Positions 49,277 through 58,300 of a DNA stretch of 64,000 nucleotides are shown here, one piece after another. A model generated the notes under the pieces. That model had not been told where the DNA came from. It worked only from the letters and a program-made list of their open reading frames with translations, and made no database searches. Both the position numbers and the translations under genes were made by a program. Location of the stretch: positions 62,001 to 126,000 of the forward strand of contig FLMG01002456.1 in the NCBI GenBank assembly GCA_900088475.1, written 5' to 3'. Each line of letters begins with the position of its first letter. Position 1 is the first letter of the stretch. Source of the stretch: Hyphochytrium catenoides (lineage: Eukaryota; Protista; Hyphochytriomycota).

Positions 49277-50154
49277 TCATTCCGCAATGGATCCAGCTGG
49301 AAGTCCAGTTGATGAATTGTTCCTTGTTGATGAGTCTTCTTGCTTCTTCAGTCCATCGAAGCTGCTCCGCAAGTTGCTGCTGCTTGTCGCATCACTCATC
49401 ACCCGTCTTATTATAAGCCTCTTGGCCTCAATCTTCCTCATTCACCCACATAGCAATCTGCATAAAGGGTCCAGCTCCCCTGTCCCTAGGGACCGACCCA
49501 GTACTTCCCTCGGAGTGGCGGTGAGGAGAGTCCATCATCTTTTGAAGGACGATTTTCAAGATCTTGCTTGCCTGAGCCTCATCGCTCCATCGCTTCTTCG
49601 GATGAGGAGCCACTTCTGGACCTCGGGCTGGAGAGACAAGCTGCAAGGCGCAAAAGCTGAGGAAGTTCTAAACTCACACTGGCTCTTGAGCGCATAACTC
49701 TTTCTGAGAAGTCTCCTGAGAAGCCGGGCCACCACAAGCGATAGCTTAGTCCAGTTCAGCCAGGACACCCCAGAGTCTGGCAAGCCATGGCGACCAGTCT
49801 GTTTGTCTTCTATGGAGCCTGTTCGTAAGAAAAATAAATTGTTGATTGATCACGTCTTCTATATGTTGCTAAGTCCTCGAATCTTCTGGACACCAAGTTA
49901 TAAGTTAGCTGTCGAGCGTGATGAGACTCTCGAGGTCCTGAAGATACAAGTCTTTTCAATATCAGGTATTGACTGAGATTACCTCTTGGCAGTGTGTGTA
50001 CAGCCTCGATGACCTTCCTCGTGCTCTTGCCGAGTAGGAGTGCCGCCAGATCGACAGCTGCTGTGCACTTTGTCGGGCCAGTTACTGCTGGCGGATGATA
50101 AGACATTGCGATCGGTAGGTCGCCTGTGAGTTCCTGGCGTTTTGGCCTCTTCAA
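49277..50154 (-). CDS. Possible orphan multi-exon gene between SF3B6 and PNGase
   Basis: Short minus-strand ORFs with plausible splice sites. No recognisable homology. Confidence 0.2.
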
Positions 50155-50232
50155 TCAAGGTTCATTAGCGTTGTTCTATAGCTCGACGTGCAGAACTTCG
50201 ATTGCATTTTCCTTGAGGATAGCCAGCAAGAT

Positions 50233-53200
50233 ATGGAGGATGTGATGGAGGCTGCCAGTGCCAGGAGCCAACTTGCACAATGGGGAGAAGCTTGCAGTAG
50301 GGTTTTCTTTGGCGATCGCCCTATCGTACAACCACGGTTTAGACTCAAAACAGGCGAGGAAGCATATTGTATGGGTTGCGCTGCTCTGCACTTTGAAGGT
50401 AAATGTCGCCTGGCCTCACGTCAGTTCGGGCCGAAAGCATCGTGTTGGCAAAGTAGCACACTAACGTCTTGCAATGCAGAACCAATTAGCATTGCGAGGT
50501 GGAAGGAAACAATCAAACCAGAGTCGTGGGACGGATACGTAACAGATATCGAGATCTGCCAGGGAGACTTCAACGTCGAAGGTAGTCCAGGTTTCCAACG
50601 TATTCCACTGGACCTGAACAGTGGAGCAGGAGGCCTCTATGCCTATTTGTGTGTCCGTAAAGGTAGGCGCTGACCGTAGAGGTTCTGAACCCTGAGTATG
50701 CTGACTTCCGACCAGGCGGACGAAAGGCACCCATTACATCTATTCTTCTACAGTTTGGCGACCAGCCCACCAAAGCCGAACTTTTGCAAGAGGGATATGT
50801 GAGGTTGGCCCCAAACTGCAACGAAGGGAATCGTAGCTTAAGTCCTGTCTACGTCTGGTATCGAAGGCTGGCAGAATCACCTGTCGTTCCATCACCTGTG
50901 GTAGGCCAAGTCCTGCATTACGATGTCTCATGAGCCATCATCTGAGCCAGCTTCCCGTACAGTCTCGAGCAATACAAGACCTAGAAGTTATTAGGCAGGA
51001 TCTCGTATCAGCCAGTTCGGACTACTTAAGAATCCCAGGAAATCTGAACGAGGGCACCAACGGACCACCGATCCACATTTACGCCAGATGGGGTCTCTCT
51101 TTCCATTGTCGAAGTGCTCTAAACTAGCTCTTACGCTTATCTCTGCGTTTATTAGGAGAAATCGGTGCTTTCACGTGCGCCACAGAAAGAAGAGTGGGTT
51201 CTTCCAACTTCCTTTTTAAAGAACGGCTAGGGATTGAAACTTACGAAGCAACATCGCTGGAAGATTTATGGTGAGCATTTGAAGATATGGTAGGATGTAA
51301 ATGTAGTTTCTACTAATATGCATCAAGTGGGAGACTGGCGATGCAGTCGCTTTGCAAGAAGTTTGAAAGTATGGCCGAGCAGAGTGAGATGATGAGATTG
51401 CTTCAAGTCCAAGAAGCGAACAAGGTCCATCTACCTCCAAGAATCGAGAGCTATTGTAGGTGAGAAGTTATGAAAACCCTATTCGTTTTCTTTCCTACGA
51501 GACTGAGGTGCATTTGTTTGAGACAGGGCGACCACTATGTTTGAGAGCCCAGAGCGACAGGAGAAGGCATTGAAGGTGTCAACTCTAGGGCCGTACCTTT
51601 CAAGTGATGTTACTGATCCTTCGTGCGCTGCAGCATATCCCAGTTGAAGAATTAAAGGCTCAAGCGACAAGCTCCAGTCAAGATGAGGAAACTTACCAGG
51701 TGGCATCAACCAAGTTCTCTTACTTGTCTGGTATCATATTTAACCGACCTTCTCATGAAGGAGGAGCTCCTTAAAGGGCTTCTCAAGTGGTTCAAGGAAG
51801 AATTCTTCTCATGGGTCAATAATGCTCCTTGCGTTGCCTGCCGATCGCCTGAAACTCAAGGAATGTCGGGAGGAACTCCTACAGCGGAAGAGGTAATTCA
51901 TCTTTTTGTCGTCTTGGCGGATTTTGCTAATCCTAGACATTTGTAGTTGATGTACGGAGCTTCCCGAGTCGAACTATATCGGTGCACAGCGTGTGGCAGC
52001 GTCAGTCGATTTCCTCGGTATAACGATCCCGGTGCGTACATTCAAACACAGCTTTCAAGATCCGGGGTTAGGCTAGCGAGGTGACGTTCCGCTTGTCTAG
52101 CAAAGTTATTGGAGACAAGGCGCGGGCGATGTGGGGAGTGGGCCAACTGCTTCACTCTCTGTTGCCGAGCGATGGGCTTTGATGCCCGTTTTGTGATCGA
52201 TTTCACGGACCACGTTTGGACGGAAGTCTATTCCCTGAAAAGAAAGGTACTTCCCTCCAGATAGGCAGTCTCTCCTCTAGCTGCACACTTATACTCCTCT
52301 GGTCATAGCGTTGGATTCACACAGATTGCTGCGAGAATAAACTGGATACTCCCCTCATGTACGAGGTGGGATGGGGCAAAAAACTGACTTACGTCTTTGC
52401 CTTCTCCAGCAAGGAAGTCGTGGATGTAACCAGGTTATTATGATTAACTCGCAAAACCATGTCGTTAACTGCTAAACCATGTCCTTTTAGAAGGTACACT
52501 AATGATTGGACAGAAGTCTTGAAACGCCGGGATCAGGCGCCGGAAACCTGGCTGGCAGACTACATTCAACGCTTGGATCTCAAACAGAGGAACAACTGGT
52601 CGCCTAATGAGGAAGAAAAGCAGGCAGGATCAATACACTTCTCATCTATGGGATAAATAGCCAAATTAACCTTCCGTCAAGACGCTTTTGCGACGCAGAG
52701 CGGAGGAAGAGGTGGAGCTCCAGCAGCAGGTTGCACGAGGAGCTCAGATTAAGGCGGGCGAGCTGCAGGGTAGAGGTTCAGGTTCCAAGGAATGGCGAGA
52801 GTCTAGAAGAGAGCTTGGAGAGTCAAGAGCTTCCGAAAAGGTAGCTTGTCCTAATACATGCTTAAAGCTCGCCATTGACCGGAGGAAAATGCAGGAGACC
52901 GAGTTTGAGAAGCTTCAAGCTACACATATTGCCACGGAGGAAAAAGACTTGAATCCCACAAAAGTGCGACTTGAAATGGACTTCAAGAGGTGGGGACATT
53001 TAATACTAAAGCTAATGCTGCGTTGTCCCAGGATCTCAGGTTCTATGCAGGCTGTTTCGACAATTATCCATTGGGTGCGGTCTGCAGAGTTGTCAGAATC
53101 CTAACTGTGCCTCTAATACGCGTAAGTACAAACTGAAGGAAGCATCTTTGGTGGACATCAGTAACAGTGGTAATACTAGAGGTGGGCCCACACGACGCGA

Positions 53201-55225
53201 CGTCCGCGGCAGCTACATCCATCAAGCTGCTCAGCAATGGAGGACAGATTGCTATTTGCCCGGAGCCGGGTATGAAGATAATTACTGGGGCTTTCATCGA
53301 ACGATCTTGGATTGAGCTGTCTGATATTATAGGTTCCTTTTCGTGGAAATGTCGCAGTCTGACACCTACATTTTTCTGGCCCTTGTGCGACATGGAGACG
53401 AATGGTTTAGTGCTCAGCCAAGGGTTAGCCTGGGGCCATAAATTAGACATGACTAGAGTAGCTTGCAACAGACCCCTTCCTATGCACTGCGATCCTCTGG
53501 CTGTGGGCGCCCAGCTCAGTCTGGGTTCATTGATAGCATGTGGCATTGAGTCGAAGGTAAATGCTTTGCCAGTCACCTTGAGCGTACCATTGAAGGGTGA
53601 CATCACTATCCGTAAAGGATGATGGCAGGAAGTGGTCCGACTGTACCGTCCTTTTTTTAATGCGTGTCGAGGCAGCTTCGGTGGAGTACCCTTGTCCATT
53701 GGTCACTTTTCATCTGAGCCGGATTGAAGAGTGTCTGGTAAGTTTTTGTCTTATATTGCTGGGACTTTTAGCTAAGAGCATCGCTGTGCCTTAGGAGCCA
53801 GTCCAAATGGACCTCCTACTTGAACATAATAAGCTTAGCCTACGAGGTGTTGAGGTGGAGTCAGGCCGGTCTGACGTTGAAATCATATCTGGAAAAAATT
53901 ATTTGGTTACCCTGGGGGCTGAAGGCAAGAAGTGGCACTTGCGAGTGAACGGTGATGTCATCTGTTCCTGGACTTTGTCAAACAGAGTCGTAAAAGCCTT
54001 ATTCGCCTCACGGAGTGCTGGCATCTCAGTTTCGATTGCCTATTTAACGGTGTTGGAATATTGTTTAGAGGAGGCAAAACTATTGCCTCTAGTCCGTGAC
54101 GGTAAGCCAATTCTTATCTAGTATTTTTTCCGAAATTCTCAGGGCTACTCGGCCTTTGCCAGCTGCCAGTCCAGCTAAGCTGGCGCTGTCAAAACGACTT
54201 GGCACCCCACATGACAATGTCTTCTCCGATGTCGGACTCGCTGCTGCCCAGCCCTTTTCTGGGTTCAGATTGTCACACGTTCGAGGTAAGCGACAGCAAC
54301 AAGTGTGATTAGGAATGATTTGTCTCTTAACCCGGCAAACCTCTAGTTTGGCACGATGAATTTATACGTGGGATACAAGCAATGTACGAGGATGAAAATG
54401 GGAACATCGTGGAGGGTCCTACCCATAGGCAGACAACTGCCGGAGAGGCATCAGTCTTCAATCTTTCACGCGAAGAAGTCATAGTTGAGCTTCATGTCCG
54501 CAGCGGAGCGTGGATGGATGCGGTAGCATTTAGAACTAACCTGGGAAGGCAGCAACACTTTGGCGGCAACGGTTAGAGCTCCTTACTCTTCTCCAACCAC
54601 GGATCTGAATTGGTAACAGACTTTGCATTGATCTTTTTTGCAGGTGGAAGCCTAACGGTGCTTCAGGCCCCTCCGGGGCATGGTGTCAGAGCTTTTTTTG
54701 GTGCCTACGGCGATTGCATGCAGAATCTGGGTGTCGCCTCATATCCCTCTCCTGCTATAATTGAAGGTGCAGTTAGCGTAGAATAAGCGCAACGATCACA
54801 CCGCTTAACTGCCTTTGCACGAATTGCAGGTACTGTCTTTCGGACGCTTAAATGCTGCCAGAGGAGGCTCGCAGAAAAATCTCTCCAACAGGCCGTTGAA
54901 GCATGTAAGGCTATTATTTTTTATCTCAACAACCACCTGCTATACTAATCTTGGTTCTGACCTAGTAATAAAGTACATGAGCAACGTTGCTTCAAATCCC
55001 CAAGAGCCAAGATTCCGGTTAATACGCGTTAACAACAAATTCTTCCAGAGCAACGTGGGAGCGATAAGTTCAGATTCCTCGGAAAGCATAATGAAGGCAA
55101 TGGGTTGGGAAAAGCAGCAAAAGGACGGCGAGGAGTACTATTTCTTGCCAACCACCCTAAATGATAAGAGTGTTAGCTCTAGCATCGTCCAGCTCCTGGC
55201 ATTTCGAGATTCAGATGAGAGTTGA
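50233..55225 (+). CDS. PNG1: Multidomain peptide:N-glycanase: Cys-rich N-terminus, MABP, transglutaminase-like core, AZUL, uncharacterised beta region, jacalin, PUB
   Basis: Core [14 protein letters not shown], CxxC..Cxx[53 protein letters not shown]. The flanking exons splice in frame. The start codon is tentative. Confidence 0.9.
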
Positions 55226-55313
55226 GATTCAGGACGAGGGGCCTTAATAAACTTGTAAGCCAGGCTTTTTAGCGTAGATGCTAGACCACTTGTGTTGAAT
55301 GTAGAGCCCACAA

Positions 55314-58300
55314 TTAGCCATTCCTTTTTTGTGGTGCTGTCTTAGCGTTCGGGGACATTATGAAGTATTGCTTCGGTGGTTGCCGCACGTTAAACTCCCC
55401 TAGCATTGCCTCTTTCATGAGGTTTTCGAGCGTGTTTTCCAATACTTCCGATAGGAGATCTTGACATTCGGAGTTGCGAAGGCATTCCACCTGTGAAGGG
55501 CTCCATTGTTCACTTTGCACAAGCAAGCTTCGTTCAACAGCCGAGTGTTGAGAACTGAAAAGGCTGGGCTCTCTGGGAGTCCGGCTGTCTTTCTGAAATT
55601 GTCTAAAGAATGGGATTACCCGCTTCTCAGGCAACAGGCTACTCACACCGTGAAGCCGCACTGTATCGACCAGGTTGGCTACAAGACTCTGCAGAACCTC
55701 CCGGCAGAGCGTTCTGCTGCTTTGAACCATCAATGGGTTCATTCTCTCTGGTGTAGGCTTCGCCCTTCCACCAGCTGCAAGTGCAGGAAAAGGTGCCGTC
55801 TTGGGCAATTGAAAGGAAAGACTTGAGGGCCCAAGATGGTATTTGCCGTACTCGTCTTGATCAACAATCAGGGCTGAGACGGCGAGAAAGGCCGTTTCGT
55901 CCACTGGAGTAGCCTTGCTGTTTAGACCCATTTTCTGGACCGCAGCTGATTGCGACTCTCTTGTAGTTGGGCGTGTTGCGAGAGCCTTTGCCGCTTTCTT
56001 AGCCTTGTTTTCCTCCATAAATGTCTCCAGGCTGGTTGCCTGACCTGCTGCTTCCGCCCTAAGATATTCGGCGACGTCCTTCCATGCCTAAGCGCCACAC
56101 GGGAACGAAAGCTGAGGACAGTGGAGATTTTATGTTTCAACAAGCAGTAAGGGCACACCTTGTTCTCTTCCAGTCTAGCATCCCAGTTCATTGTTGACCG
56201 ACGTAGAACTGAACTTCTTGTTGGCTCTACTGGCGCAGCTTCTCCGCCGCCTTGGATGGCAAACGTTCCTGCATCAAAAATGCCAGGTTGTATTGTCATC
56301 ACGACGACGCCATGAACAACAGTCTGAAACGGTTCTAACCTTTGAGGCTACCCTTGGGAGACTCTGCGGCCGCGTCGTGAAGTGGAATCACCGTGCAAGA
56401 TAAATCTTCCATAAGAGCGATCGGTGTGTCACAATGATCGGCTGTGGCAGTAGAACATTAGACGCTATGAAGGGGATACAGAATGCAAAGTCTTTGTCTG
56501 TTACCTCTTAGGTGAACAGTGACCAAAAGTGAACTGTCTGGCTCAATTCGGCCGGATAAGAGCGAGAATTGGATTATGCCCTGCCTCACCAAGGGATGCG
56601 TTCGGTCCCATTCAAAAAAGATGGTGGGCTTCAGTCCCGGAGAGACGGCAGTGGCGGTATTTCGTAGGGTAATGATATGTGAGGTGACGGATCCCATAGG
56701 CAAAATTCCGAATTGTAGCCGGACATGCGACAAGGTAAGCATCGTGTTCTTTATCATAGGCTTCACTGGAGGCCCGTCTTCACTTGCAGATGGCTTTGAG
56801 GTATTGTGGTCGCCAGCCCTTAATGGATGGAAACCTCGCGCAGTCAAGTGCAGCACCTTGCTGTCCGTGTTAGCAAGACTAGGGTTGTGCTTCAACTGAA
56901 GGAGTAAAGATTACCTTCTCTTCGGCATATCCTGCAGAGACGCCATCCTCCAAGGTCTGATAAACCGATAGGGTGACCTTGGTTGTATAGAGCCTCGCTT
57001 CCAGCGGAGTAAAGATTACTTGAATGGCTCGCTTACTCATAGGATCTACTGTTCCTCTAGGATTCTTTATACAGAAGACATCCAGCCCAAAGTTATCCTC
57101 TTTCTCTTTTTCTGTTCCATCACGGTCTAGCTGATATTCAAAGGGGCAGTCACCCGCGTTGTAGAGATAAAACGTCTACGAGTAGGGCACCGCAACATGA
57201 AGACGACCATTAGGTAAGGTAGCGACGATCATTACTTGAGTGCCTCTGGAATGTAGTCAACCATTCACAGTCTCTACCTGGAGAGGTACTCTTTCGAGTC
57301 CGATTGGAACTGGCGTAAGATCCACCGTTTCACTCTTGATAAACATCAACGGAGTGTTCGTCGGTAGCGTGCGGCCTTGCAATTCCCAAACCAACTGTTT
57401 ACCCTTGGACAACTGGAACACTATGGGTACCTTATGAACCCCATTATACTTGATTGAGTGATATGAGTAGGTAATACGAATTTGCTGTGTCTTGTTCGGC
57501 TCAATGGCACCCCTCCTCGGGTTGACGGTAAAGAGATCAGCGTCTAGGATCCAGTTCTGCTGAACTTGTTCGGCTGTCGGCTGCCCCTCATCATCCCAAC
57601 TATAGAAACATGTGAGTGACCAGCTTTGTGAAGGTGCTATCGGAGGAGTTACCGTTCAAGCTCTACCTCCTTCTCGTTTGGATAACGCACAACAAACTCT
57701 GTAGCGATGCCTCCACGGTTGCTGAGCTCCAGGATAACCTCCTCTGGGGCGCTTCCCAGTACTTGAGGCACAAAGCCAAAAGGGTATCTGGACAAAAAGT
57801 ACGAGCGCGGACCGAAGGTGATCACTGAGTACAAGGATATAGTTGTAGGCAGAAAAGAGTGCAGTCGGCTATGACTCAAATTGAGTGTAGTCGGCTAGCC
57901 AGACCCCACTACACATTGAACTGGATTTACCTGGGTAGGCGACTGGTATCCAGTGCTCTTGTGTCTTCATTTCGGACGATCTCCTCGCGCGTCAAAGGAC
58001 TGGACAAGAACTCATTTAGACGTGCTACCTGGAACTGGTCGTACAATATTGAAGTTGGTATCCTATTGCTTCTGATGTCCACAATCCTTATTGTGGGAAA
58101 GGAAGCAATGACCTCCAGCTGTATGAAAAGGCTGAGGTCAGGTGACTCTTATTTATATAGGCTCAATAACCTCTAAAGCAACCTTGCATGCTGTCATGGC
58201 TTCCGGCTTGGAGAACTGTTCAGTGGGTTCCTGAATGCTGGAGCGACACTTAACCAGTACAAGATACGTTGCTTGATGTTGTGGCTTAAAGGTCGCCACA

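What the first reader, a model, noticed from the sequence alone, without database searches (positions are those of the whole stretch)
50233..55225. All-in-one ERAD deglycosylase: PNGase fused to MABP, AZUL, jacalin and PUB domains
Seen: one spliced frame runs through Cys-rich leader, MABP-like repeats (~50530-51090), PNGase core with intact C-H-D triad (RCGEW, DHVW, HTDCCE; ~51761-52620), AZUL-like finger (53040-53265), a beta-rich region, jacalin-like lectin (~54195-54745) and C-terminal PUB (~54830-55225). Established: animal NGLY1 is PUB-core-PAW and reaches the proteasome through Rad23; PUB binds the p97/Cdc48 tail, AZUL of E6AP binds Rpn10, MABP binds acidic membranes, and jacalins bind mannose/galactose. 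Inference: this single protein could dock on the membrane, recognise N-glycans, receive substrates from p97 and pass them directly to the proteasome without a shuttle factor. I do not know this combination as a characterised system, but related protists may share parts of it.
Basis: partly seen in the sequence, partly recalled or inferred. Interest (0 to 1): 0.85.

Follow-up and report, generated by a model that had tools for sequence, protein, structure and literature searches.

The report
Oomycete-type multidomain cytosolic PNGase gene
This is one real 26-exon gene for a cytosolic enzyme that strips N-glycans from misfolded proteins, fused to membrane-, sugar-, Cdc48- and proteasome-docking modules; the same fusion is already catalogued, though untested, in all oomycetes.

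Summary
One spliced reading frame carries a Cys-rich leader, a three-repeat MABP beta-prism, an intact PNGase core, an AZUL finger, a beta-rich region, a jacalin-like domain and a C-terminal PUB domain.

Two corrections:
- The gene starts at 49787, not 50233. Three upstream exons add an N-terminal, probably ubiquitin-like, domain. The model has 26 exons, 25 introns of 49-81 nt and 1298 aa.
- The beta-rich region corresponds by position, and weakly by sequence, to a concanavalin-A/L-type-lectin-like jelly roll in the orthologues. It is not a PAW domain.

The spliced protein aligns end to end (E about 1e-152 to 1e-164, roughly 30% identity) with single annotated proteins of Phytophthora, Pythium and Saprolegnia. 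Lagenidium aligns likewise, over q15-1186 of its longer protein. These proteins carry the same Pfam domain set. In a quick tree the window protein is sister to the oomycete clade.

The MABP + PNGase + PUG(PUB) fusion in P. infestans was already noted by de Souza and Aravind (2010). The AZUL, jacalin and lectin-like parts appear only as database annotation. Nothing has been tested at the bench.

This is a new member of a known but uncharacterised family.

The parts
49787..55225 (+). Whole gene: 26 exons, 25 introns (49-81 nt, mean 62; 24 GT-AG, 1 GC-AG), 1298-aa protein, TGA at 55223-55225
   Evidence: Manual splice model checked by translation. It is colinear with oomycete orthologues at E 1e-152 to 1e-164. 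There is an in-frame stop 17 codons upstream of ATG 49787.
49787..50220 (+). N-terminal probable ubiquitin-like domain (aa 1-83), spread over exons 49787-49824, 49874-49965, 50035-50114 and the start of exon 50182-50398.
   Evidence: A profile of oomycete N-termini hits the spliced model at E 8e-11. The top five PDB hits of that same profile are all ubiquitin-like domains, UBLCP1 and 1v5t, but weakly (E 0.015-0.34). The sequence contains a 'VGVPPDRQLLCTLSGQLL' motif.
50269..50481 (+). Cys-rich leader (aa 100-143): W..C...FG..VQP...C..C...H, possibly a zinc knuckle
   Evidence: The motif is conserved in oomycete, ochrophyte, dictyostelid and metagenome PNGases. Its fold is unresolved, with AF2 pLDDT below 60 in the orthologue.
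50482..51157 (+). MABP-type beta-prism (aa 144-309), three internal repeats in exons 50480-50662, 50716-50900 and 50963-51092
   Evidence: The repeat profile A1 hits 8b6v at E 7.5e-16 with three stretches. The oomycete MABP profile hits the model at E 5.8e-33. The AF2 model of the P. infestans orthologue matches 8b6v, 3tow (MVB12B MABP) and 2qp2, and nothing else is significant.
51158..51769 (+). Helical N-terminal extension of the PNGase core (aa 310-432)
   Evidence: It aligns with the equivalent region of other PNGases.
51770..52491 (+). PNGase transglutaminase-like core (aa 433-592). Triad: Cys512 (52127-52141), His539 (52208-52219), Asp556 (52318-52335). Zinc CxxC pairs at 51830-51841 and 51983-51994.
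   Evidence: Pfam Transglut_core at 1.8e-13. The core is 64-66% identical to other PNGase cores. All catalytic and zinc residues are aligned.
52492..52843 (+). Post-core helices and the conserved [18 protein letters not shown] motif (aa 593-690). This stretch spans the GC-AG intron 52624-52681.
   Evidence: The motif is aligned in all PNGases examined, including those without PAW. It explains the weak Pfam PAW hit, E 0.024.
52967..53268 (+). AZUL zinc finger (aa 732-792), split by introns 52990-53050 and 53122-53179. Four Cys at spacings of +5, +5 and +31.
   Evidence: Pfam AZUL at 9.6e-8, above its cut-off. The oomycete AZUL profile hits the model at E 2.5e-10. Orthologues also score for AZUL.
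53269..54167 (+). Beta-rich region (aa 793-1032), probably a divergent concanavalin-A/L-type-lectin-like jelly roll
   Evidence: It sits at the same position as the orthologues' region, whose AF2 model (pLDDT 77) matches ERGIC-53, Emp47 and VIP36 lectin domains and other ConA-like jelly rolls at Z 14-16. Pfam Laminin_G_3 is weak in the orthologues. Sequence links to the window protein are weak: profile E 6.8e-4, hhalign E 0.005 and 0.07, and BLAST 2.4e-4 to Aphanomyces.
54168..54765 (+). Jacalin-like beta-prism (aa 1033-1187)
   Evidence: Pfam Jacalin at 5.6e-7, above its cut-off. The oomycete jacalin profile hits the model at E 8.7e-26.
54766..55222 (+). C-terminal PUB (PUG) domain (aa 1188-1298)
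   Evidence: Pfam PUB at 4.4e-15. The oomycete PUB profile hits the model at E 5.7e-24.

Best explanation
The locus is a single gene at 49787-55225 on the + strand. It encodes the orthologue, in a lineage sister to the sampled oomycetes, of the oomycete-type cytosolic peptide:N-glycanase.

Domain order:
1. Probable ubiquitin-like domain.
2. Cys-rich leader.
3. MABP beta-prism, present in oomycete and window proteins after the leader and absent from ochrophyte and dictyostelid orthologues.
4. Helical extension.
5. Catalytically intact PNGase core.
6. Conserved GRxSGSxEW motif.
7. AZUL zinc finger.
8. ConA-like jelly roll, divergent in this protein.
9. Jacalin-like domain.
10. PUB domain.

Shown here: gene structure, domain identities, intact catalytic and zinc residues, and orthology.

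Inferred mechanism:
- The enzyme removes N-glycans from glycoproteins that Cdc48/p97 extracts from the ER.
- PUB holds it on the Cdc48 C-terminal tail.
- The two lectin-like modules take the glycan-reading role that PAW has in animals.
- MABP keeps it at a membrane.
- The ubiquitin-like domain and AZUL give it contacts with the proteasome or with shuttle factors. In yeast and animals the corresponding contact runs through Rad23.
For: Gene model:
- A continuous 1298-codon frame runs through 25 tightly sized introns.
- AATAAA lies 23 nt after the stop.
- An in-frame stop lies upstream of the ATG.

One protein:
- End-to-end alignments with P0085, P0020 (P. infestans), P0019 (Pythium) and P0107 (Saprolegnia) give E 1e-152 to 1e-164.
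- Intronless metagenome relatives L001 and L014 carry leader, core, a jacalin-like region and PUB in one uninterrupted ORF of 1264-1293 aa.

Domains:
- Pfam hits on the window pieces.
- Orthologue profiles against the spliced model: MABP 5.8e-33, AZUL 2.5e-10, jacalin 8.7e-26, PUB 5.7e-24.
- Fold searches on orthologue models.
- Catalytic triad and zinc sites aligned.

Orthology:
- The quick maximum-likelihood tree places the window protein as sister to a 12-row oomycete clade, SH-aLRT 99 and 100.
- The MABP and AZUL insertions sit at the same positions.

Literature: MABP-PNGase-PUG in P. infestans PITG_02329 (PMC2881412). E6AP AZUL binds the RAZUL of hRpn10 (PMC7064531).
Against: - No transcript evidence was available, so every splice junction is predicted.
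- Intron 16 of the full 26-exon model (intron 13 of the model; 52624-52681) needs a GC donor, and the first intron is only 49 nt.
- The beta-rich region matches the orthologues only weakly.
- At the position that I recall (from memory) as the canonical sugar-binding Asp of jacalin lectins, this protein has Gln, and the orthologues vary there. Glycan binding by that module is therefore uncertain.
- RAZUL is reported for 'higher eukaryotes' and is absent from fungi. Whether this lineage's Rpn10 has one is unknown.
- No function of any member of this family has been tested.
Confidence: 0.85

Rival explanations
1. The locus holds two adjacent genes. A MABP-PNGase gene ends at the stop at 52654-52656, reached by reading through the proposed GC-AG intron. 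A separate AZUL-lectin-PUB gene then starts at the first Met of the next exon.
For: Intron 52624-52681 has a non-canonical GC donor, and reading through it meets a stop after 10 codons. No RNA data are available.
Against: - The GRGSGSKEW motif follows the core in every PNGase, yet it lies downstream of that intron and upstream of the first Met of the next exon. It can only be translated as a continuation of the core.
- Orthologues are continuous across this point, with only a 3-residue length difference.
- The intron is 58 nt, which matches the local norm.
- There is no intergenic space for a promoter.
Confidence: 0.04
2. The gene is as described, but its main role is not ER-associated degradation. 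MABP would target the glycanase to endosomal or vesicular membranes for cargo sorting or glycoprotein turnover, as de Souza and Aravind proposed. Alternatively the protein has a role independent of deglycosylation.
For: - MABP domains elsewhere sit on endosomal membranes or on target membranes (PMC2881412).
- A deglycosylation-independent essential role of PNGase is the title finding of the Drosophila paper PMC2866665, seen only in the listing and not read.
- The position I recall as the canonical jacalin sugar-binding Asp is not conserved.
Against: The catalytic triad and zinc site are fully conserved. PUB, the ubiquitin-like domain and AZUL all point to Cdc48 and the proteasome rather than to ESCRT. 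No ESCRT-linked domain such as UMA is present.
Confidence: 0.1
3. The beta-rich region is a divergent PAW domain, as in animal NGLY1.
For: There is a weak Pfam PAW hit, E 0.024, at the GRGSGSKEW motif. The region also lies after the core, as PAW does in animals.
Against: - The motif occurs in PNGases without PAW.
- Exon pieces find no PAW chain in the PDB.
- The orthologue model matches ConA-like and L-type lectin jelly rolls at Z 14-16. No PAW-domain entry is apparent among the 50 rows shown in either list.
- Orthologues score weakly for Laminin_G_3, not for PAW.
Confidence: 0.03

Closest known systems
[quoted passage not shown]
   Same: Same domain order and same insertion points for MABP and AZUL. 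Jacalin and PUB are C-terminal in both. The N-terminal probable ubiquitin-like domain and the Cys-rich leader are shared. The proteins are colinear over their full length.
   Different: Identity is only about 30-36%. The window protein branches outside the sampled oomycetes. The beta-rich region is barely recognisable. The linker before AZUL is longer. The gene has 25 short introns.
Animal NGLY1 / yeast Png1
   Same: Same transglutaminase-like core, catalytic triad, zinc site and post-core GRxSGSxxW motif. The family also uses a PUB domain.
   Different: - In animals PUB is N-terminal and the glycan-binding module is PAW.
- Proteasome contact runs through Rad23/HR23B (from established knowledge; PMC2791212 was seen only in the listing).
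- In this protein PUB is C-terminal and PAW is replaced by ConA-like and jacalin-like modules.
- MABP, AZUL and the ubiquitin-like domain are extra.
Other protist PNGases with lectin or ubiquitin-like additions (Naegleria, Physarum, Cavenderia, Arcella; Tribonema and Scytosiphon; metagenome L001, L014 and L040)
   Same: The shared theme is a PNGase core followed by a lectin-type module: legume/L-type lectin, jacalin or F5/8-C. Ubiquitin-like, PUB, PUL or thioredoxin domains are often added.
   Different: These proteins lack the MABP insertion and mostly lack AZUL. Exceptions carrying AZUL are P0117, P0045 and P0136.
MVB12B MABP domain (3TOW) and the beta-prisms of the MACPF proteins Mpf2Ba1 (8B6V) and Plu-MACPF (2QP2)
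   Same: All share a three-fold repeated beta-prism with the DLNxGxxG...YLC signature.
   Different: The context differs: ESCRT-I or pore-forming proteins in those cases, against a cytosolic glycanase in this one.
E6AP/UBE3A AZUL domain
   Same: Pfam AZUL scores above its cut-off. Four Cys lie at matching spacing, and there is a helix-loop-helix around the zinc knuckle.
   Different: In E6AP the domain sits at the N-terminus of a HECT ligase. In this protein it is internal to a PNGase, and its partner is unknown.

Membership tests
Cytosolic PNGase (PNG1/NGLY1, transglutaminase-like) | Transglutaminase-like core recognised by profile | tested here: met
   Pfam Transglut_core at 1.8e-13 on a single exon. 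The core is 64-66% identical to other PNGases.
Cytosolic PNGase (PNG1/NGLY1, transglutaminase-like) | Cys-His-Asp catalytic triad and two CxxC zinc pairs | tested here: met
   C512, H539 and D556, with C453/C456 and C486/C489, align with NGLY1 and the protist PNGases.
Cytosolic PNGase (PNG1/NGLY1, transglutaminase-like) | Deglycosylating activity on N-glycopeptides | not testable with these tools
   This needs an enzyme assay.
Oomycete-type MABP-PNGase-PUB family | Full-length colinearity with family members | tested here: met
   Single HSPs cover q3-1206 or q15-1193 at E 1e-152 to 1e-164.
Oomycete-type MABP-PNGase-PUB family | Same domain set and order, including the MABP insertion after the leader and AZUL after the core | tested here: met
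   Pfam on the orthologues, segment profiles against the model and alignments.
Oomycete-type MABP-PNGase-PUB family | Groups with the family in a tree | tested here: met
   The window protein is sister to all 12 oomycete rows, SH-aLRT 99. This is the quick tree only, because the careful search did not finish.
MABP beta-prism | Three homologous repeats forming a beta-prism | tested here: met
   Three repeats align. Their profile hits 8b6v three times at E 7.5e-16. The orthologue model matches 8b6v, 3tow and 2qp2. The fold of the window protein itself was not modelled.
MABP beta-prism | Binding to acidic membranes | not testable with these tools
   This needs a liposome assay.
AZUL zinc finger | Profile match above the curated cut-off and four zinc-ligand Cys | tested here: met
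   Pfam gives 32.6 bits against a cut-off of 23.8. Cys lie at aa 748, 753, 758 and 789 of the model.
AZUL zinc finger | Binds a RAZUL-type helix pair of Rpn10 | not testable with these tools
   The Rpn10 of this organism is not in the window.
Jacalin-like lectin | Profile match above the curated cut-off | tested here: met
   Pfam gives 30.5 bits against a cut-off of 22 on one exon. The orthologue profile hits at 8.7e-26.
Jacalin-like lectin | Canonical sugar-binding GxxxD loop (motif recalled from memory) | tested here: inconclusive
   The equivalent loop reads GDCMQNLG, with Gln at the Asp position. The orthologues vary at this site.
PUB/PUG domain | Profile match above the curated cut-off | tested here: met
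   Pfam gives 55.8 bits against a cut-off of 34.3.
PUB/PUG domain | Binds the C-terminal tail of Cdc48/p97 | not testable with these tools
   This needs a binding assay.
PAW domain | PAW profile or fold in the region after the core | tested here: not met
   Only the shared GRxSGS motif scores, at E 0.024. The exon pieces find no PAW chain in the PDB. The orthologue fold is ConA-like.
Concanavalin-A-like / L-type lectin jelly roll | Jelly-roll fold in aa 793-1032 | tested here: inconclusive
   The feature is met for the P. infestans orthologue, with Z 14-16 to ERGIC-53, Emp47 and VIP36. The window protein links to that region only weakly, and a spliced protein could not be submitted for folding.
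Ubiquitin-like domain | Profile or fold match to the ubiquitin superfamily | tested here: inconclusive
   The best PDB hits of the orthologue N-terminal profile are all ubiquitin-like domains, but only at E 0.015-0.34. Pfam Rad60-SLD or ubiquitin score in only 3 of 16 members. The model matches the orthologue profile at 8e-11.

The most novel reading that the evidence does not exclude
In the oomycete lineage and its sister, PNGase would be a self-contained bridge from Cdc48 to the proteasome. PUB would hold Cdc48, and the ubiquitin-like domain and AZUL would dock directly on proteasome receptors. That would make a Rad23-type shuttle unnecessary. It would also imply that AZUL binding to an Rpn10 tail, or to a ubiquilin UBA, is far older than animal E6AP. 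AZUL recurs in unrelated protist PNGases (P0117, P0045, P0136), which hints at a real functional link.
Probability: 0.2. Interest if true: 0.6.

Novelty: new member of a known kind. Interest (0 to 1): 0.3.

Why it matters
The family places a membrane anchor, two candidate glycan readers, a Cdc48 handle and two candidate proteasome handles on one deglycosylating enzyme. In yeast and animals these functions are spread over several proteins, so the family could serve as a compact model of the last cytosolic steps of ER-associated degradation. It also shows that the glycan-reading module of PNGase has been swapped repeatedly in evolution (PAW, L-type lectin, jacalin, F5/8-C).

The practical value of this window is limited. 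It adds a deep-branching, intron-rich orthologue. It corrects the gene start. It shows that the AZUL, lectin-like and ubiquitin-like parts of the family have not been discussed in the searchable literature.

Tried and rejected
- An automatic exon-chaining script skipped real exons, so I replaced it with manual curation.
- The beta-rich exon found nothing in 1.84 billion representative proteins, nothing in metagenome contigs and nothing in the PDB. The protein itself and any transcript of it are therefore absent from these collections, and RNA support could not be obtained.
- I rejected the PAW reading of the beta-rich region.
- I rejected the alternative acceptor at 50679, which would give a 17-nt intron. 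The 50715 acceptor gives a gap-free alignment with the orthologues.
- The acceptor at 50950 remains possible as an alternative to 50962. It would add four residues.
- Spliced sequences could not be handed to Pfam, AlphaFold or the large protein searches. Multi-exon domains were therefore tested in three ways: on single exons, through profiles built from orthologues and run locally against the spliced model, and on orthologue structures.
- Literature searches for PNGase with AZUL, and for an oomycete PNGase, found no experimental work.


Full report
**Observation**

The region is an intron-rich eukaryotic gene on the + strand.
- Transglut_core, 1.8e-13, 52085-52261.
- AZUL, 9.6e-8, above its cut-off, 53016-53312.
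- Jacalin, 5.6e-7, above its cut-off, 54331-54573.
- PUB, 4.4e-15, 54809-55222.

The only PAW signal is a weak hit (E 0.024) on the motif [18 protein letters not shown].

**Gene model**

I curated the splice sites by hand from the sequence and checked them by translation. These introns are 53-81 nt long, most of them 57-63 nt. All are GT-AG except 52624-52681, which is GC-AG. Such a narrow intron size class along the whole locus leaves no intergenic space between the domains.

Comparison with orthologues then showed about 85 residues missing at the N-terminus. The sequence upstream contains three further exons: 49787-49824, 49874-49965 and 50035-50114. The ATG at 49787 follows an in-frame stop 17 codons upstream.

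The full model has 26 exons, 25 introns of 49-81 nt (mean 62) and 1298 aa. AATAAA lies 23 nt after the TGA.

**Evidence that it is one protein**

No transcript or predicted protein of this organism is present in the collections. The beta-rich exon found nothing among 1.84 billion representative proteins and nothing in metagenome contigs.

A scan of metagenome contigs with the core exon returned 80 PNGase loci. Two of them, L001 and L014, carry leader, core, a jacalin-like region and PUB in single uninterrupted ORFs of 1264 and 1293 aa.

I used the L001 ORF and then Pythium P0019 as full-length queries. This uncovered a family present in every sampled oomycete: Phytophthora, Peronospora, Plasmopara, Bremia, Hyaloperonospora, Pythium, Lagenidium, Albugo, Saprolegnia, Aphanomyces, Achlya and Thraustotheca.

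Precomputed and recomputed Pfam annotation of these proteins lists Transglut_core/Rad4, AZUL, Jacalin and PUB. It also lists Laminin_G_3 in some members and the MVB12/MABP model in Lagenidium.

The spliced window protein aligns with P0085, P0020, P0019 and P0107 in single HSPs covering almost its whole length. E-values are 1e-152 to 1e-164 at about 30% identity.

Profiles built from orthologue segments hit the spliced model as follows:

| Segment | E-value |
|---|---|
| MABP | 5.8e-33 |
| AZUL | 2.5e-10 |
| Jacalin | 8.7e-26 |
| PUB | 5.7e-24 |
| N-terminal domain | 8e-11 |

A quick maximum-likelihood tree places the window protein as sister to the 12 oomycete rows, with SH-aLRT 99 and 100. 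The careful search did not finish, so this is the quick tree only.

**The individual domains**

*MABP.* The three internal repeats align with each other. Their profile hits the C-terminal beta-prism of the MACPF protein Mpf2Ba1 three times, E 7.5e-16. An AlphaFold model of the P. infestans segment has pLDDT 81-97 over the prism. Its only significant matches are 8b6v, the MVB12B MABP domain 3tow and Plu-MACPF 2qp2. These are the founding members of the MABP family (PMC2881412).

*Core.* The catalytic Cys512, His539 and Asp556 and both CxxC zinc pairs are aligned with NGLY1 and the other PNGases.

*GRxSGSxEW motif.* It is conserved in all PNGases examined, with or without PAW. It is therefore not evidence for PAW. 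It does tie the exon after the GC-AG intron to the core.

*AZUL.* It is split over three exons and keeps four Cys at spacings of +5, +5 and +31.

*Beta-rich region.* It is the least conserved part. In P. infestans it models with pLDDT 77 as a jelly roll. The best matches are the L-type lectin domains of ERGIC-53, Emp47 and VIP36 and other concanavalin-like modules, at Z 14-16. Foldseek ranks the lectin-like subdomains of clostridial neurotoxin binding domains first, and these share that fold. The window protein links to this region by position and by weak scores:
- profile E 6.8e-4;
- hhalign E 0.005 and 0.07 on two exons;
- one BLAST hit of 2.4e-4 to Aphanomyces.

I call it a probable, divergent ConA-like module.

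*Jacalin-like domain.* It is recognisable. The loop I recall as carrying the canonical sugar-binding Asp reads GDCMQNLG here, and it varies among the orthologues. Sugar binding is therefore open.

*N-terminal domain.* Its profile matches only ubiquitin-like domains in the PDB, but weakly, at E 0.015-0.34.

*Leader.* It is a widely conserved Cys motif of unknown fold.

**Mechanism**

Shown: an intact PNGase with the listed modules on one chain.

Inferred from the known roles of the domains:
- PUB binds the Cdc48/p97 tail.
- MABP binds membranes (PMC2881412).
- E6AP AZUL binds the RAZUL tail of Rpn10 (PMC7064531).
- Ubiquitin-like domains dock on proteasome receptors.
- L-type and jacalin lectins read mannose-rich glycans.

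Together these suggest an enzyme held at a membrane and on Cdc48. It would select N-glycosylated clients and contact the proteasome directly.

Caveats:
- RAZUL is reported in higher eukaryotes and is absent from fungi. Its presence in this lineage is untested.
- The lectin sites are not demonstrably canonical.
- An endosomal role, as suggested in 2010, is not excluded.

**Comparison and novelty**

[quoted passage not shown] The 90% cluster of P0020 contains the P. infestans T30-4 protein annotated as a putative PNGase.

The AZUL, jacalin and Laminin_G_3 parts appear in public domain annotation of the orthologues. I found no paper that discusses them or tests any member.

Related protists show the same theme with other modules:
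- legume or L-type lectin with PUL or ubiquitin in amoebozoans and Naegleria;
- thioredoxin, jacalin and PUB in brown and yellow-green algae;
- F5/8-C in plants and dinoflagellates.

The finding is therefore a correct reading of a real gene and a new member of a catalogued but uncharacterised family. It is not a new kind of system.

Noticed in passing
window 52624-52681: This is the only non-GT donor in the gene, a GC-AG intron of 58 nt (cagGCAGGA...tcaAG). Reading through it meets a stop at 52654-52656.
   Followed up: partly
window 53064-53699 (- strand): A 211-aa ORF lies antisense to the largest exon of the gene. It is most likely a by-product of the coding strand's composition and not a gene.
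   Followed up: no
window 55248-55253 and 55314-56018 (- strand): AATAAA lies 23 nt after the stop codon. A 234-aa ORF on the opposite strand ends only about 90 nt downstream, so the two genes converge very closely.
   Followed up: no
P0012 (Lagenidium giganteum), aa 88-313 and 413-640: The leader plus MABP module appears twice in tandem in this 1585-aa orthologue. Both copies align with aa 15-240 of the window model at 31% identity.
   Followed up: no
L001 8891-12685 and L014 8783-12664: These intronless metagenome relatives (1264 and 1293 aa) carry a ubiquitin-like N-terminus, leader, core, jacalin-like region and PUB, but no MABP and no zinc-binding AZUL. Residues of about 560-960 match nothing. 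A short 'RRLFDLLVSEGMEPNVAAAKALHDI' stretch before the jacalin-like region looks like an AZUL helix pair without the Cys.
   Followed up: no
window 50269-50398; orthologues: The leader motif W..C...FG..VQP...C..C...C is conserved from dictyostelids to oomycetes. In the window protein the last Cys is His. Its fold and function are unknown, and the AF2 confidence is low.
   Followed up: partly
P0102 (Albugo laibachii, 2086 aa): This protein is annotated 'Elongator complex protein 2' but also carries PNGase core, jacalin and PUB domains. The gene model probably merges two neighbouring genes.
   Followed up: no
P0117, P0045, P0136: AZUL is also fused to PNGase cores in proteins outside the oomycete family. 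One carries ubiquitin and NHL/SGL repeats, and one has AZUL at the extreme C-terminus. This suggests a recurrent link between AZUL and PNGase.
   Followed up: no
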